Below, in pieces: positions 21,177-41,300 of a stretch of 64,000 bases of DNA. Made by a program: the position numbers and the translations under genes. Position 1 is the first letter of the stretch. Each line of letters starts with the position of its first letter. The notes under the pieces were generated by a model. It searched no databases. It had not been told where the DNA came from and saw only the letters and a program-made list of their open reading frames with translations. Source of the stretch: Magallana gigas (Eukaryota); assembly GCF_963853765.1 (NCBI RefSeq), contig NC_088858.1, positions 8,990,001-9,054,000 of the forward strand. Direction: 5' to 3'.

Positions 21177-22998
21177 ATGGTAAGTGCAGCTCTATACCCT
21201 CTCTCTCACAAACAAATTGGTTTTTTTTTTTTCAAAATTAATTTTTTAATTCGTTTCATTAATAAAAATAGTGAAATATTGGATGCCACCATCCCTCCTT
21301 TCCAGAAGATTGAAAAATGTGTAAATAGTCATTTGCAGTATATCTGTTAATGTTAGTAGAATATTAAGGCAAATCTAACTAGGACAGAACGCTGATTTGG
21401 TTTTATTGTAGTGTTGTCTATGATATCATTTTTACTCTACCGTTGTTACTTCTCAGTAGAGTTATTTATCATTTTTTTTCATTTTTTTTAAACTAACTTT
21501 TAGATAACGAGACATAAGCTGTAGTTAGAACCTATATAATATCGTTACAATAGTTTTCATGCCTGTTTTGTATCGAAACAGATAAAGATGAATTTGAGGT
21601 GACTTGAGACAAACATTGATTAGATTGATTAAATTGTTAAGGGAAGTGATGAAGGATATATTAAATGGGCGGAAATGTATAATACATGGGAATGTAGGTG
21701 TACATGTATGTACAGTGGTGGGTACTGCTAAGGCGTGTAGTGACAGGATTAAATAATGCTTACAGATATGGACGGCTGTCTTAGTGTAAGTTTGTAAAAT
21801 GTAAGTTTTAAAAAAAACGCATTCAATATTCAAAAATTCCATTATGATGTTCCATTTTGAGATTTTAAAAATGTTTTATTACCGTTTCTTCCCAAATCAA
21901 TGGAGTTTCTTTCATTCATGTAATATTGCTTATCAACACCCGATTGCCGGATAGGTTACTATTGGTGTTCTAGTATCATTATCATCACACATTTTCAAGG
22001 CAAACACAATTGATTCGTTAATCTAAACACTCATATGACTTCGTGAAACATTAGGTTTATTGAGTGAAAACATGTATTTTTCTTAATGATTACATGTGAA
22101 TTTCTATCAAATTTTCAAAGAAATAAAAAACATTGGATTAATAATTGTTTCTTTTTTTCAGGCCGATCAACTCACAGAAGAACAAATTGCTGGTAAGTAA
22201 GAAGGGAAAAATTGTCTTGTCGAAAGAACCATTAAAACTTCTAAAACATATGCTCGACTTTGAAATTCTTTAAACTGATATCATTTTCTCTGTATATTTC
22301 AGAATTTAAAGAGGCTTTCAGCCTTTTTGACAAGGATGGAGATGGCACCATCACAACTAAAGAACTGGGTACAGTTATGAGATCCCTAGGACAGAATCCT
22401 ACAGAGGCAGAGCTTCAAGACATGATTAACGAAGTTGATGCTGATGGTAAGTGAAAAATATGAGTTTATGTTCTGTTCTTCACTTCCGCTGTCGACCACT
22501 TTCATGAATAAAAACGTAGAGCCATTAACCACCAATATTCAAAGATACATGTATTTTACTTATCTAAATATTTGCATTAACAGGAAACGGAACCATCGAT
22601 TTCCCAGAATTCCTCACCATGATGGCTAAGAAAATGAAGGATTCCGATTCTGAAGAGGAACTTCGGGAAGCTTTCCGTGTGTTCGATAAAGACGGAAACG
22701 GTTTCATCAGCGCCGCTGAATTACGTCACGTGATGACAAATTTAGGAGAAAAACTTACCGATGAGGAGGTCGACGAAATGATCAGAGAGGCTGATTTAGA
22801 CGGTGATGGACAAGTCAACTACGAAGGTAATGAAATTGCCATTCTCTTACGATTGTCATGTTGTGACACGATACCAAAAGTGATTTTGGTTCAAGAAATA
22901 GTTATATATTACTCACTAGCTGATGTTTCCTAGTTTAAATTTTAAATATGCGCCAATTTTACATTGTAGAATTTGTTCGAATGATGACCAGTAAGTAA
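21177..22998 (+). CDS. CaM: Calmodulin D (149 aa), closest to canonical invertebrate calmodulin
   Basis: join(21177..21179,22162..22192,22303..22446,22584..22826,22970..22998). [149 protein letters not shown]. Confidence 0.97.
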
Positions 22999-23702
22999 AT
23001 GGGATTGTTTCACCTAAACAGAGCAGTACATCGACTTCCACTCAAGGCCAGATCTTCTACATCAATGTGCTGAAAGTGAAATCAAACACAGAAATGAGAT
23101 CGTTTTTATACCGTGTATACCTAGTGAGACATTATACATTCGTTTTGGAACATTGAATATTAATGATCTGACACATACATATATTTTATATGAACATTTT
23201 ATTATTTATGTTGAATAAAACCTGTTGGAAAATATTTTATCAGAATTTGGTATCATGGATCAATGAAAAGGGAATTGTCGAAAAGAGAAATTATTTAGTT
23301 TCGATAAAGTTGAAATATTTTGTATAACAGTCCCTTTGTTACTATAGAAAACCTAGATAAAAGATCAAGTCTGGGGTAATTAATCCTAAAAAGCAGAAAG
23401 ATCAATATTGTAAGATAAGATAAAAAGATTCAGCTTTATGCCATTATGTAACGTTCATAGGTTCTAGGAGATCGAAGAATGAGGTTTAAATCAATTTACC
23501 CAGAAAAGAATTTCTTCCGACCTAACGAAGTAAAGTGCATTTTTGTTTTAGGGGCAATAACATCGAGAACAAAGCATGCAAGATAAGATTTATGTTCTTG
23601 AAAATTCATCGTAGTTTAATAACTGAAATTAAACAAACCTACACTTGTTTAATTAACTTTAAACAAGTCTATGTATATCTTTATTATAAATGTGCACGAC
23701 AT

Positions 23703-23855
23703 NNNNNNNNNNNNNNNNNNNNNNNNNNNNNNNNNNNNNNNNNNNNNNNNNNNNNNNNNNNNNNNNNNNNNNNNNNNNNNNNNNNNNNNNNNNNNNNNNN
23801 NNNNNNNNNNNNNNNNNNNNNNNNNNNNNNNNNNNNNNNNNNNNNNNNNNNNNNN
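23703..23855. other. Assembly gap (153 N)
   Basis: Run of N. Confidence 1.
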
Positions 23856-37985: not shown

Positions 37986-38324
37986 AAAAAACTTTACATG
38001 AACTTATAATATACTCTTCTGTCCAAAATAATATGGTCTCAAATTCATTTGCAAACATTATTTTCCACTAATCGAGAATGCTTCAATCGGATATGAAAAT
38101 TTAATAACAAAAGACATAAAAGAAATGTTTTATTGACTAAGCAATTGTTGTTTCGCAAGAACAAAGGAGTTAATTTTGCGCTAAAACAGATTTTCATATA
38201 ATTCGAGGACTATTTTTTTCTGGCGAAGGTAGAATATTAAAAGTATTGATTTGTCCCCCGAACCATTTAAACCCAACCAGAATATCCTACATTTATAGCT
38301 GTACAGTGGACTTAAAGCCGCAAA

Positions 38325-41300
38325 ATGGTAAGGTCCTTAATATCAATGAACACTTTATATTTACAAATAAAAGATGTTAATGTAAATACACCCACGTGTA
38401 TGCTACTATCGCTTGAAGAAAAGTTTGTTATGTCAATTTCATATTTTAATTTAACAGTACAGGAGATGTTAAATGTATTCGAAAAGGCTTCCCATTTTTT
38501 TCGTCCGTTAAATTGCCCAACTACCGTAATTCACTAGACAATTAACTCTGCACAGGCAGGGGTTTGTATATGTCTGCAATGGCAACCAAGTGCAGTCAAA
38601 AGAACACGCGTTTATCTTTATTGTTTGCATTATGAAGTGTCAACTGCATGATAAACCGGGGGTTGTATTTTTAATCAAATACTGTACGAACCATTTAATA
38701 ACTCGAATCTATTCTATATAATTACTTTAGTTTTTTTATTGACCGCATAACATCATTTTCTCGTTCAATATACTTTTTGAAATGCCGGTGATCTGAGAAG
38801 CTGTTGAATATTTCATATTTTGCAATCCATTTTCGTTTACTTAAAAGTTACATATATCTTGCTTTCTCGATTCTTTAATGGGAGTGACCTCATAAAGCAG
38901 TAATTGTAGTTAAATAGACAATCTGTCTGCTCTTTTCTTCGAGCTGAAACATGTAGATGGATATTTTCCTAGATGAAAATGACACCAAGAGAAATATGTT
39001 TATGATTAGAAATCCAAAGCCATCGCTTATAATAGTCTGTAAGCCTAATAAATCAACACAGTAGCTACCTGAAAATTCCAACATGCCCTGCGCCTTCTTT
39101 TTAAGAATAAATTGCATAAATATAATGTGACGGTCAGACCCAAAATATTAGAGGCAAGCTTGGTATAAGCATGATGAAATGCAGAAAGTAGAGTTTTCTT
39201 GAGAAAAAAACCTTAAATACATGAGTAATAACTCAGACTTAAGTGCGCGATTTTACAGAATTTTTTTTTTCGAGAAATCGGAGCCCGAGATGATTGAAAA
39301 ATTTCGCTCGAATGAAATTTTATCAATATGATTCATATTTTTACCTGTCTTTTTACAGGCAGAGCAACTAACAGAAGAACAGATAGCAGGTAAATAATGT
39401 AAAGTACACACGACACTTCTTATCTCTTTATAACTTTTCATTGCACAATTTCTATACATTAAGTCATTTTACATCAGAATTCAAAGAGGCATTCAGCCTT
39501 TTTGACAAGGATGGAGATGGAACCATCACAACCAAAGAACTGGGTACAGTTATGAGATCCCTAGGACAAAATCCTACAGAGGCAGAGCTTCAAGACATGA
39601 TTAACGAAGTTGATGCTGATGGTAAGTGACACATACTGGACGAATTGTTGGGACGTCGCTGTGGATAAAAAGACATCCATGGTTTTTTCTGCACTTACAA
39701 ACATGTACATATACATGTATTAACCGGTACTGTAGTCTCGGTGAGATTCGAAATGGCTATGGTATTTCAAATTATAACCAATCAGTGAATTTTCTGGCAC
39801 TCAGTCCATTTTCGCTCACCAACCTCATAAAGCTTGAAATGTTTGTTTCTGTAAACAGAGCTTCCTTATTACTTAAGGAAACTCAAAACTTCGTTAAAGA
39901 AATACAAAAATATGGCAGCTTAAACAAATACTAATAAGTACAATCATGTATAATAGTAATAATAATAGTTTACGCATTTTGTTCCTCGACAAGCTACCGA
40001 AGTATGGGACAGATTTCTAGAGTACTGTTTCAAAGATTTGCTGAAGGTCTTATTGTCCATAAAGCCAATAAGAATTTGGCATAGATGAAAAATACATGGT
40101 AGGAAAGTAAAGTGTTTTTCAGATAAAAATACATGTCTTATTCGTTCTGGTTAAAAAGTAGTTCCTCAATCGTTTACCTATTGAGATTTGTAGAAATTAT
40201 GACTCAACATGTATAGAATTTCTTTTTTAAAAAGTCTTTGTACACGCACTTTGTTTACACAACGACAAAATTTTTAAACGTTGAATATCACTTTACCAAG
40301 TTTAATGACCAAGTGTACAGAGCGATTTAACTTTCTGATTTTATCAGTTATCTTTCCTGCCTTGTACCAAGCTAAGATTAAAAAATGTCCGTGCTTTTCT
40401 GCAATTAATACTTGTGACAGAAGAAAAAGAAAACTTATATTGAATTTTTAAAAGCTAAATCGAAAATTGTGCACGCACTATGGTACATATTTCTTTTTGT
40501 GTATTTGGATTTAACCTAATACATTGTTGTTGGGACTTATCGTCAAGTGTCAGTTACTTTGAAGTTTTTTTTTTCTTTAAATCTAGTGTATAAACAGAAA
40601 AGGAGCTATGTGAACGCATGACTTTTATCTAGCCAAGGGAAGAATTGGTTGTTATCAGAGAAAGACAACTTCATATGCAATCCTTTAATCCTTTAGTACA
40701 TAGGACAGATAGCTGCAAAATTAGCAGACTGAATAACCACTAAAGAACGAAAAAGTCTAGGAATATCAAAAATTAGTACAGAGGATATGAGGTTCATTAA
40801 AGAGTATGACAGTAAAAACTACGGGACTATATGTTTCTTTTTGATAAAGTTGCTTCAATTAATAACCCTGATTTGAACTTAAGTTATTGTAACACTAAGT
40901 AGCATAGCTTGATAAAAAGGGTTTGGGCACATTCTAATAAATCAAATGACACATTATTCTCTTTTAACATGCTCTTTAATTTAAAATTATTAAAGAATAT
41001 ATTGAAAATACTTCTTTCCGATGCATTCTGGCTAGTCTTGCAATACGGTTACGGTATAACATCAGCAACGTGTATCTTTGTAACAACACGTTGGTTATTA
41101 TATCTATAGGGGTTGGAAACATTGTGCTAGCTTTAATGGGGTCCCCGTAATGATATATAGTATATTTTCCACTATTTAAACCCCCATCCAAAAAGTCCCC
41201 CTCACACCTTTCAGACCCACCCACTTTCACCCCCGCCTTACTTGGTTTTGATTATAAACAATTTCTGGAAGGTCAATTAAGCAATGTTAATTATCTTTTA

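What the first reader, a model, noticed from the sequence alone, without database searches (positions are those of the whole stretch)
22303..39621. Gene-conversion signature confined to exon 3 (N-lobe) of calmodulins D, E and G
Seen (hand counts): exon 3 (144 bp) differs at only 5 sites between D and G, 4 between E and G, and 7 between D and E. Between D and G, exon 4 differs at about 57 of 243 sites, exon 2 at 6 of 31 and exon 5 at 6 of 29, mostly at synonymous positions, and the flanking introns do not align. Protein-level selection cannot explain synonymous identity in one exon only. Inference: recent or recurrent non-allelic gene conversion keeps the N-lobe identical while the C-lobe diversifies, producing mosaic calmodulins.
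Basis: partly seen in the sequence, partly recalled or inferred. Interest (0 to 1): 0.7.

Follow-up and report, generated by a model that had tools for sequence, protein, structure and literature searches.

The report
Exon-limited gene conversion among oyster calmodulins
Three neighbouring calmodulin genes of the Pacific oyster, and at least one more elsewhere in its genome, share an almost identical 144-base exon while the rest of each gene has diverged to saturation. The likeliest cause is that the copies repeatedly overwrite that one exon in each other, a clean new example of a known process.

Summary
Exon 3 (144 bp) differs at 5 (D-G), 4 (E-G) and 7 (D-E) sites. D-G differ at 57/243 sites in exon 4, 6/31 in exon 2 and 6/29 in exon 5. 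Synonymous difference is 0.10-0.20 in exon 3 against 0.88-0.92 in exon 4 for D/E versus G, and the introns do not align.

The N gap (23703-23855) lies about 470 bp past D's poly(A) site, in intergenic DNA, and touches no compared exon.

- Scallop and Mya orthologues encode the identical exon-3 peptide but are saturated at synonymous sites (pS 0.71-0.80), as in exon 4. Exon 3 is therefore not intrinsically slow.
- Independent DNA contigs and spliced RNA reads support the exon junctions they cover.

RNA and DNA reads reveal at least one further, about five-fold more expressed paralogue outside the window with the same exon 3. E is silent in the runs laid, and F is a frameshifted pseudogene.

Best explanation (about 0.72): recurrent non-allelic gene conversion confined to exon 3. 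Main rival: an oyster-specific nucleotide-level constraint (about 0.12). The claim that conversion "keeps the N-lobe identical" is unnecessary, because that peptide is invariant across bivalves anyway.

This is a new member of a known kind. The scan had already noted the eight-gene array on this stretch, but not this signature.

The parts
21149..21179 (+). 3' end of D exon 1, ending in the ATG start codon (21177-21179) followed by GTAAGT
   Evidence: The loose end of an RNA contig in front of D exon 2 matches here exactly.
22162..22192 (+). Calmodulin D exon 2 (31 bp)
   Evidence: AG/GT borders. RNA joint 22191>22302.
22303..22446 (+). Calmodulin D exon 3 (144 bp), a homogenised exon. D-private sites are 22307, 22346, 22358 and 22394
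   Evidence: RNA joints lie on both sides. RNA depth is 3.5x that of D exon 4 because other paralogues' reads fit here.
22584..22826 (+). Calmodulin D exon 4 (243 bp). It is 23.5% different from G and 9.5% different from E
   Evidence: DNA contigs from two runs cover 22425-22756 with 0 differences.
22970..22998 (+). Calmodulin D exon 5 coding part (29 bp, stop included). Poly(A) site near 23234
   Evidence: RNA joint 22824>22968. An RNA contig ends in poly(A) at 23234.
23703..23855 (.). Assembly gap (N), intergenic between D and E. Not part of any compared exon
   Evidence: Contigs reach both edges but none bridges it. Left unfilled.
26852..26882 (+). Calmodulin-like E exon 2
   Evidence: AG/GT borders and frame.
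27405..27548 (+). E exon 3, a homogenised exon. The sites that differ from D and G (27532, 27536, 27538) are shared with pseudogene F
27629..27871 (+). E exon 4. No RNA depth in the runs laid
   Evidence: Depth is 0 over 27700-27899.
28683..28711 (+). E exon 5 coding part
31264..31389 (+). Pseudogene F exon 3 (126 bp, with an 18-bp deletion). It is 15-19% different from D, E and G
31466..31677 (+). Pseudogene F exon 4 (212 bp). Deletions of 18 and 13 bp; the 13-bp one shifts the frame
   Evidence: The E-F introns align (p=0.22-0.32).
39359..39389 (+). Calmodulin-like G exon 2
   Evidence: 202 RNA reads carry this exon in front of exon 3.
39478..39621 (+). G exon 3, a homogenised exon. The only site where G differs from both D and E is 39491; there G matches pseudogene F
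41620..41862 (+). G exon 4, saturated against D and E at synonymous sites. In two public contigs its first ~92 bp are replaced
42065..42093 (+). G exon 5 coding part

Best explanation
D, E and G are old duplicates in a tandem array of eight calmodulin or calmodulin-like genes of the Pacific oyster. Their introns are randomised, and exon 4 of D/E versus G is saturated at synonymous sites. Their 144-bp exon 3 has been repeatedly homogenised by non-allelic (interlocus) gene conversion, which also involves at least one highly expressed paralogue outside the window.

Tracts start and end inside the exon for two inferred reasons. Only the exon still offers enough identity for heteroduplex formation. 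And converted alleles are neutral there, because all copies encode the same invariant peptide. In the diverged C-lobe exon, conversion has mostly stopped, through loss of homology or through selection against it.

Shown: the mosaic divergence pattern; the absence of a general synonymous constraint on exon 3; the independent support for the junctions; and the extra paralogue. Inferred: the conversion events themselves, their direction and their number (at least three transfers are needed to homogenise four genes).
For: 1. Exon 3 pS is 0.10-0.20 against 0.88-0.92 in exon 4 for D/E versus G. Fisher p is 2e-8 to 8e-11. The identical-codon fraction at conserved residues is 0.89-0.95 in exon 3 against 0.45-0.46 in exon 4. 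The background against paralogue A is 0.27-0.42.
2. Rate calibration. Oyster against scallop gives pS 0.71-0.78 in exon 3 and 0.75-0.99 in exon 4. The ML path D-scallop is 0.20 (exon 3) against 0.25 (exon 4), whereas D-G is 0.035 against 0.38. Exon 3 therefore evolves at a normal synonymous rate between species and about 10x too slowly between paralogues.
3. Relative dating. E and F still align through their introns (JC 0.27-0.42). D-E and E-G introns are at random level (p 0.43-0.54). Yet exon-3 dS among D, E and G (0.11-0.23) is below the E-F neutral distance.
4. The three sites where E differs from D and G (27532, 27536, 27538) are shared with its sister pseudogene F. This fits a tract that left the 3' 17 bp of E unconverted.
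5. RNA reads: 790 reads leave D exon 3 into an exon 4 that is absent from the window, and DNA contigs leave it into a foreign intron. The exon is therefore shared family-wide.
6. Mya tandem calmodulins show no exon-3-only effect.
7. Two public contigs (L007, L008) carry a G gene whose intron 3 and first ~92 bp of exon 4 are 23% different, with everything downstream identical to G. This looks like a segregating inter-paralogue exchange with an exon-internal breakpoint.
Against: - No orthologous array from another oyster could be fetched, so the classical proof (exon 3 clustering by species, other exons by orthology) is missing.
- Identity ends at the exon borders in all three pairs, which constraint would also predict.
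- The AU test cannot reject oyster monophyly for exon 4 (p=0.24).
- A Sawyer-type permutation on three sequences gives no clear exon-3 signal: for the two strongest pairs p is 0.02 (D-G) and 0.06 (E-G), and its one strong result (D-E, p=1.5e-4) was not localised to exon 3.
- GC3 is not raised in exon 3 (0.35 against 0.42-0.48), so there is no GC-biased-conversion footprint.
- Oyster exon-3 RNA folds somewhat better than shuffles (z -2.5 to -3.1).
- L007 and L008 are de Bruijn contigs, and their donor gene was not found.
Confidence: 0.72

Rival explanations
1. Oyster-specific nucleotide-level constraint. Exon 3 carries a function in the DNA or RNA itself (RNA structure, splicing or translation signal, or a target of a small RNA). 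That function arose in the oyster lineage before D, E, G and the outside paralogue split, and it has frozen nearly all synonymous sites since, with no exchange between copies.
For: - Identity stops at the exon borders.
- Exon-3 RNA of D, E and G folds better than shuffles (z -2.5, -2.5, -3.1), while scallop (+0.1) and Mya (-1.1) do not.
- E has at most one private change in exon 3 since the E-F split.
- The pseudogene F, freed from constraint, has decayed.
Against: - The identical peptide is encoded with saturated synonymous differences in scallop and Mya, so any constraint would have to be lineage-specific and cover almost every third position.
- Third positions that are unpaired in the predicted fold are conserved too (D-G 2-3 of 17-19, p<=0.0035; E-G p<=1.3e-4).
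- The E-specific changes break a predicted helix.
- There is no Rfam match in 20-43 kb.
- E shows no RNA in the runs laid, yet keeps the exon.
- Paralogue A shares no excess codon identity in exon 3 (0.27-0.31).
Confidence: 0.12
2. Reverse mosaic. D, E and G are fairly young copies whose exon 3 shows their true age. Exons 2, 4 and 5 and all introns were replaced piecemeal from more distant calmodulin paralogues.
For: L007 and L008 show that intron 3 plus the 5' part of G exon 4 can be swapped for a distant paralogue's sequence. The family is large, with further arrays on the same chromosome.
Against: It needs many independent replacements on both sides of exon 3 in each of three genes, all stopping at the same exon. 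E and F share introns and the 3' exon-3 variants, so the E backbone is older than the exon-3 similarity to G.
Confidence: 0.05
3. Assembly or polishing artefact. Short reads of one paralogue were used to correct the others, or copies were collapsed.
For: Exon 3 is a multi-copy stretch. k-mer contigs break inside it, and no unique contig spans it end to end.
Against: - The three copies differ from each other at 4-7 sites and sit in unique introns.
- DNA contigs from two studies cover 22425-22756 (exon-3 end, intron 3, exon 4) with 0 differences.
- Other contigs cover E intron 2 into exon 3 (27080-27419) and E exon-3 end into exon 4 (27523-27801).
- RNA reads independently show that several differently continued transcripts share the exon.
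- Sequences 24% apart could not have been cross-polished.
Confidence: 0.02

Closest known systems
Interlocus gene conversion / concerted evolution confined to part of a gene in tandem paralogues (for example human gamma-globin HBG1/HBG2, RHD/RHCE, Drosophila amylase coding regions). Cited from my own knowledge, not tested here.
   Same: There is a sharply bounded block of near-identity, including synonymous sites, inside otherwise diverged paralogues. Flanks are unalignable. Several family members are involved.
   Different: Here the block is one 144-bp exon that encodes a peptide already invariant across animals. It is shared by at least four genes, one of them outside this 64-kb window. The events are inferred, not observed.
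Exon-restricted conversion of the ligand-binding-domain exon in paired immune receptor families (CEACAM, Siglec, KIR). Cited from my own knowledge.
   Same: One exon is homogenised among paralogues while the remaining exons diverge, which gives mosaic proteins.
   Different: In those families conversion changes the protein and is thought to be selected. In the oyster calmodulins it is protein-neutral, since only 1 of the 8 variable sites changes an amino acid (V/I in E).
Vertebrate CALM1/CALM2/CALM3: three genes that encode the identical calmodulin with strongly diverged synonymous sites. Cited from my own knowledge.
   Same: Multiple calmodulin genes and extreme protein conservation. The exon plan is the same except that oyster exon 4 equals vertebrate exons 4+5 (107+136=243 bp). 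Mya has the split form.
   Different: Vertebrate copies show that protein selection alone leaves synonymous sites free, as scallop and Mya do here. The oyster exon 3 departs from that rule.
Tandem calmodulin array of the clam Mya arenaria (locus L002)
   Same: Several tandem calmodulin copies with near-identical exon 3 (93-98% nucleotide identity).
   Different: In Mya all exons are about equally similar (codon identity 0.81-0.93) and the introns still align (76-82%). These are young whole-gene duplicates, not an exon-limited mosaic.

Membership tests
Non-allelic (interlocus) gene conversion / concerted evolution | A segment whose divergence between paralogues, synonymous sites included, is significantly lower than in the flanking segments | tested here: met
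   pS is 0.10-0.20 in exon 3 against 0.88-0.92 in exon 4 for D/E versus G. Fisher p is 2e-8 to 8e-11. Introns are unalignable.
Non-allelic (interlocus) gene conversion / concerted evolution | The low divergence is not explained by a generally slow rate of that segment (synonymous sites are free between species) | tested here: met
   Oyster-scallop pS is 0.71-0.78 in exon 3 and 0.75-0.99 in exon 4. Oyster-Mya exon 3 pS is 0.80. No exon-3-only effect in the Mya array. A constraint peculiar to oysters is not excluded.
Non-allelic (interlocus) gene conversion / concerted evolution | Different segments of the same genes give conflicting trees | tested here: inconclusive
   In the exon-3 tree D, E, F and G form one tight clade (78/92). 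In the exon-4 tree G falls outside D/E/F plus scallop plus Mya (58/74), but the AU test does not reject oyster monophyly (p=0.24). The intron evidence (E-F sisters) conflicts with exon-3 distances.
Non-allelic (interlocus) gene conversion / concerted evolution | Paralogues within a species are closer than orthologues between closely related species for the converted segment only | not testable with these tools
   No genomic locus of another oyster species could be fetched.
Non-allelic (interlocus) gene conversion / concerted evolution | Segregating or directly observed exchange tracts | tested here: inconclusive
   L007 and L008 (two samples) carry a G gene with a foreign intron 3 and foreign first ~92 bp of exon 4, then exact G sequence. 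This concerns exon 4, not exon 3. They are short-read graph contigs, and the donor was not found.
Calmodulin (four EF-hand, 149 residues) | A 149-residue product with four EF-hand loops, the animal calmodulin exon plan and near-identity to canonical calmodulin | tested here: met
   D, E and G each translate to 149 residues with ATG + 31/144/243/29-bp exons. The exon-3 peptide of D and G is identical to scallop and Mya calmodulin. D is spliced as predicted.
Structured RNA element within exon 3 | A fold better than chance, conserved by compensatory changes, with free unpaired positions | tested here: not met
   z is -2.5 to -3.1, which is only modest. There is no Rfam family. Unpaired third positions are conserved as well. 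E's changes break a predicted helix. There are too few variable sites for covariation.
Assembly artefact (collapse or cross-polishing of paralogues) | The copy-specific exon-intron links lack independent read support | tested here: not met
   Independent DNA contigs from two studies and spliced RNA reads confirm D's exon 3-intron 3-exon 4 link and both borders of E exon 3. The interior of exon 3 is not spanned by a unique contig.

The most novel reading that the evidence does not exclude
Exon 3 is a family-wide cassette. Either it is kept uniform by exchange among many calmodulin genes over megabase distances, with the most expressed gene acting as master copy and with recombinant alleles still segregating. 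Or it carries an oyster-specific function at the nucleic-acid level (the exon folds better than chance, z about -3) that freezes synonymous sites in every expressed copy.
Probability: 0.12. Interest if true: 0.6.

Novelty: new member of a known kind. Interest (0 to 1): 0.4.

Why it matters
Oysters have one of the largest EF-hand and calmodulin repertoires among molluscs (PMC5040781), and this family is used to discuss shell formation and stress signalling.

- **Gene trees.** An exon that is homogenised across paralogues breaks whole-gene trees, dS-based dating of duplications and orthology calls for the family.
- **Expression estimates.** It misassigns short RNA-seq reads. Here D's exon 3 shows 3.5 times the depth of its exon 4, and the silent gene E appears covered.
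- **A teaching example.** Exchange persists where the protein is invariant and dies out where paralogues diverge.
- **Population genetics.** If the recombinant G allele is real, inter-paralogue exchange in this family can be studied in living populations.

Tried and rejected
- **Look-up of the spliced D protein.** I did not resend it elsewhere, so no orthologous oyster loci could be reached that way.
- **Homologue searches.** Three searches, with the E and G exon-4 open frames and with the 5' part of P0222, were swamped by generic two-lobe calmodulins. They yielded only the scallop and Mya loci, the G-locus contigs, and no donor for L007/L008.
- **Window ORF look-ups.** The E exon-4 ORF is not on record. 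The D exon-4 ORF gave one contig without exon 3.
- **Sawyer/GENECONV-type permutation on D/E/G.** It gave no clear exon-3 signal, because a near-identical exon contributes few variable sites (D-G p=0.02, E-G p=0.06). Its one strong score (D-E, p=1.5e-4) was not localised to exon 3. Fisher tests and between-species calibration were used instead.
- **GC-biased conversion footprint.** Absent.
- **Four-taxon site patterns in exon 4 (D/E/F/G).** Judged uninformative, because G is saturated and two-fold sites match by chance.
- **Rfam scan of 20-43 kb.** No hits.
- **Literature.** No paper in the held library reports conversion among oyster or other calmodulin genes. PMC5040781 describes one 113-residue oyster cDNA and EF-hand counts only.
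- **Read laying variant table.** It was truncated (53 rows not shown) and listed no exon-3 sites, so shared polymorphism could not be assessed.

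
Full report
**What is there.**
The window is 33% G+C DNA of the Pacific oyster. It carries a head-to-tail array of eight calmodulin or calmodulin-like genes on the + strand:
- A about 8982-9586
- B about 11642-12299
- C about 16653-17146
- D 22162-22998
- E 26852-28711
- F about 30374-32504
- G 39359-42093
- H about 47421-51493

D, E and G each have the plan ATG / 31 / 144 / 243 / 29 bp with AG..GT borders, and each translates to 149 residues. D is closest to canonical invertebrate calmodulin.

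**The gap, tested first.**
The only N run is 23703-23855.
- D's stop codon ends at 22998.
- Spliced RNA reads confirm D's three introns (joints 22191>22302, 22445>22583, 22824>22968).
- An RNA contig ends in poly(A) at about 23234.
- E exon 2 starts at 26852.

The gap is therefore intergenic, about 470 bp past D's transcript end, and no compared exon or frame crosses it. DNA contigs of two runs reach both edges but none bridges it. The D-E neighbourhood thus rests on the scaffold, which does not affect the exon comparison.

**The observation.**
Every hand count is reproduced:

| Segment | D-G | E-G | D-E |
|---|---|---|---|
| Exon 3 | 5/144 | 4/144 | 7/144 |
| Exon 4 | 57/243 | 60/243 | 23/243 |
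| Exon 2 | 6/31 | 8/31 | 10/31 |
| Exon 5 | 6/29 | 11/29 | 8/29 |

- Nei-Gojobori pS is 0.17, 0.10 and 0.20 in exon 3, against 0.92, 0.88 and 0.30 in exon 4.
- At conserved degenerate residues, the same codon is used in 89-95% of cases in exon 3. In exon 4 of D/E versus G the figure is 45-46%, which is the background seen against paralogue A (27-42%).
- Fisher tests give p=2e-8 (D-G) and 8e-11 (E-G). For third positions alone, p=3e-7 and 4e-10.
- blastn finds nothing but exons between D-E, D-G and E-G. The exon-3 match runs 4 bp upstream and at most 14 bp downstream.

**Is exon 3 simply slow?**
I fetched the calmodulin loci of the scallop Mizuhopecten (L001) and the clam Mya arenaria (L002).
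- Their exon 3 encodes exactly the same 47 whole codons as D and G. Only 42-53% of the codons are identical, and nucleotide identity is 81-85%.
- pS oyster-scallop is 0.71-0.78 in exon 3 and 0.75-0.99 in exon 4. pS oyster-Mya in exon 3 is 0.80.
- On ML trees the D-scallop path is 0.20 in exon 3 and 0.25 in exon 4. The D-G path is 0.035 in exon 3 and 0.38 in exon 4.

Between species, then, exon 3 evolves like exon 4. Between the oyster paralogues it is about ten times too similar. In the exon-4 tree G even falls outside D/E/F plus scallop plus Mya. Support is weak (58/74), and the AU test does not reject oyster monophyly (p=0.24). In the Mya array all exons are equally similar and the introns still align, so nothing exon-3-specific is seen there.

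**Internal dating.**
E and F are the youngest pair. Their introns align with p=0.22-0.32 (JC 0.27-0.42), whereas D-E or E-G intron pairs sit at the random level (0.43-0.54). F is a pseudogene in this assembly, with an 18-bp deletion in exon 3 and 18-bp plus 13-bp deletions in exon 4, the latter shifting the frame.

Exon-3 dS among D, E and G (0.11-0.23) is below the E-F neutral distance, although the D, E and G backbones are older than the E-F split. The eight variable exon-3 sites sort as follows:
- Four are private to D (22307, 22346, 22358, 22394).
- One sets G apart from D and E (39491); there G matches F, so it is not strictly private.
- Three are in E (27532, 27536, 27538), and all three are shared with F.

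E therefore keeps the native E/F state in the last 17 bp of the exon, while the first 127 bp are G-like. This fits a tract boundary inside the exon. It also means that the E/F ancestor already carried a D/G-like exon 3, so homogenisation is old and repeated rather than a single recent event.

**Read evidence (window 22100-28099).**
- DNA contigs from two different studies cover 22425-22756 (end of exon 3, intron 3, exon 4 of D) without a difference.
- Other contigs cover E intron 2 into exon 3 (27080-27419) and the end of E exon 3 into exon 4 (27523-27801).
- k-mer contigs break inside exon 3, as expected for a multi-copy stretch.

In poly(A) RNA, depth on D exon 3 is 3.5 times that on D exon 4. 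790 reads leave D exon 3 into an exon 4 that does not occur in the window. 222 reads join a D-like exon 2 to an E/G-like start of exon 3. 172 reads bring an exon 1 that is also not in the window. This defines at least one further paralogue elsewhere. It is about five times more expressed than D (790 against 152 junction reads), and its exon 3 is at least 95% like D/E/G and apparently of the G type. DNA contigs of both runs also leave D exon 3 into a foreign intron.

G is expressed: 202 reads carry G exon 2, and 107 carry a G-like exon 4. E shows no reads on exon 4, so it is silent in these samples. Its low pN/pS against D (0.041/0.30) still speaks for a functional gene. Earlier notes of this scan list four more calmodulin arrays on the same chromosome. 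I could not read them.

**A possible live exchange.**
The open frame over G exon 4 exists in public short-read contigs (P0121 cluster). Four contigs (L003-L006) match the G locus at 98-99%.

Two contigs from two other samples (L007, L008) have a different intron 3 and 21 differences in the first ~92 bp of exon 4. That stretch encodes the K1PYA6-type peptide. Both contigs then continue exactly as G through the rest of exon 4, intron 4 and exon 5, and L007 for more than 1 kb beyond. They sit on two different downstream haplotypes.

Neither kind of contig breaks at the junction. This argues for alternative alleles rather than two co-resident genes, and makes a graph chimera less likely, but it is not proof. 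The donor was not found. This concerns exon 4, not exon 3. It does show that exon-internal exchange between calmodulin paralogues is plausible in this species.

**Rivals.**
- *Oyster-specific nucleotide-level constraint* is the serious rival.
  - For it: identity ends at the exon borders, and exon-3 RNA folds somewhat better than shuffles (z -2.5, -2.5, -3.1; scallop +0.1, Mya -1.1).
  - Against it: third positions that are unpaired in the fold are conserved too (p<=0.0035 for D-G). E's own changes break a predicted helix. No Rfam family matches. The silent E keeps the exon. Any such constraint would have to cover nearly every synonymous site and be absent from other bivalves.
- *Reverse mosaic*, in which everything but exon 3 was replaced, needs many coincident events.
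- *Artefact* is contradicted by the copy-specific variants, the unique introns and the independent reads.
- There is no GC-biased-conversion footprint (GC3 0.35 in exon 3 against 0.42-0.48 in exon 4). This neither helps nor seriously hurts the conversion reading.

**Mechanism, with what is shown and what is inferred.**
Shown:
- the mosaic divergence pattern
- a normal between-species rate for exon 3
- the relative dating against the E-F introns
- family-wide sharing of the exon
- independent read support for the junctions

Inferred:
- Repeated non-allelic gene conversion, with at least three transfers for four genes.
- Tracts that begin and end within the exon, because only there is identity still high enough.
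- Neutrality of the tracts, because the peptide is the same in all copies. Of the eight variable sites, only the V/I in E changes the protein.
- In exon 4, D and E still share a similar 3' two-thirds (11 differences in 171 bp against 12 in the first 72 bp). G has left the exchange pool.

Purifying selection alone keeps this peptide invariant from oyster to clam.

**Verdict.**
I found no report of it for calmodulin or for oysters in the held literature.

Noticed in passing
window 31264-31389 and 31466-31677: F, the gene between E and G, is a pseudogene in this assembly. It has an in-frame 18-bp deletion in exon 3, and 18-bp plus 13-bp deletions in exon 4, the latter shifting the frame. Its introns still align with those of E (p=0.22-0.32).
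   Followed up: yes
L007:1-395 and L008:1-612 against window 41620-41862: Public contigs from two samples carry a G gene with a different intron 3 and a 23% different first ~92 bp of exon 4. They are identical to G from there on, and they sit on two downstream haplotypes. This is a recombinant allele, a fusion by unequal crossing-over, or a graph chimera. The donor was not found.
   Followed up: partly
outside the window (seen through reads laid on 22161-22447 and 27403-27549): There is a further calmodulin gene with its own exon 1, a D-like exon 2, a G-like exon 3 and a distinct exon 4. It is about five times more expressed than D in a poly(A) RNA run. DNA contigs also show a copy of exon 3 followed by a foreign intron.
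   Followed up: partly
window 27629-27871: E has an intact 149-codon frame and a low pN/pS against D, but zero RNA depth on exon 4 in one raw-read run and one contig run. All RNA on its exon 3 comes from other paralogues, so short-read expression estimates for E would be false positives.
   Followed up: partly
window 22584-22826 against 27629-27871: D-E exon 4 is itself a mosaic, with 12 differences in the first 72 bp and 11 in the remaining 171 bp. Overall pS is 0.30, although the D-E introns are at random level. This looks like a second, older or partial exchange tract.
   Followed up: partly
window 28997-29500 and 29708-30207: A 500-bp direct repeat at 92% identity lies between E and F. It is much more similar than the rest of the E-F duplication (72-76%).
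   Followed up: no
window 17886-18292 and 36304-36759: Repeat copies are shared between the region upstream of D and the region upstream of G, on both strands (70-83% identity). They are probably a transposable element and not part of the gene duplication.
   Followed up: no
L002 (Mya arenaria CP111022.1) 6595-25532: Mya has its own tandem calmodulin array, with exon 4 split into 107+136 bp as in vertebrates. The annotated protein P0001 fuses the C-lobe exon of one copy to the C-lobe of a copy further along the array.
   Followed up: partly
window 39612-39621 plus 41620-41629: The 3'-RACE primer printed in PMC5040781 (Table 1) spans an exon 3/exon 4 junction that matches G (and L007) but not D or E. 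The published 113-residue oyster 'cgCaM' cDNA may therefore derive from G or a G-like gene.
   Followed up: no
window 22200-22300: One DNA run (X8) has a contig that skips 99 bp of D intron 2. This is a length polymorphism or comes from a paralogue.
   Followed up: no
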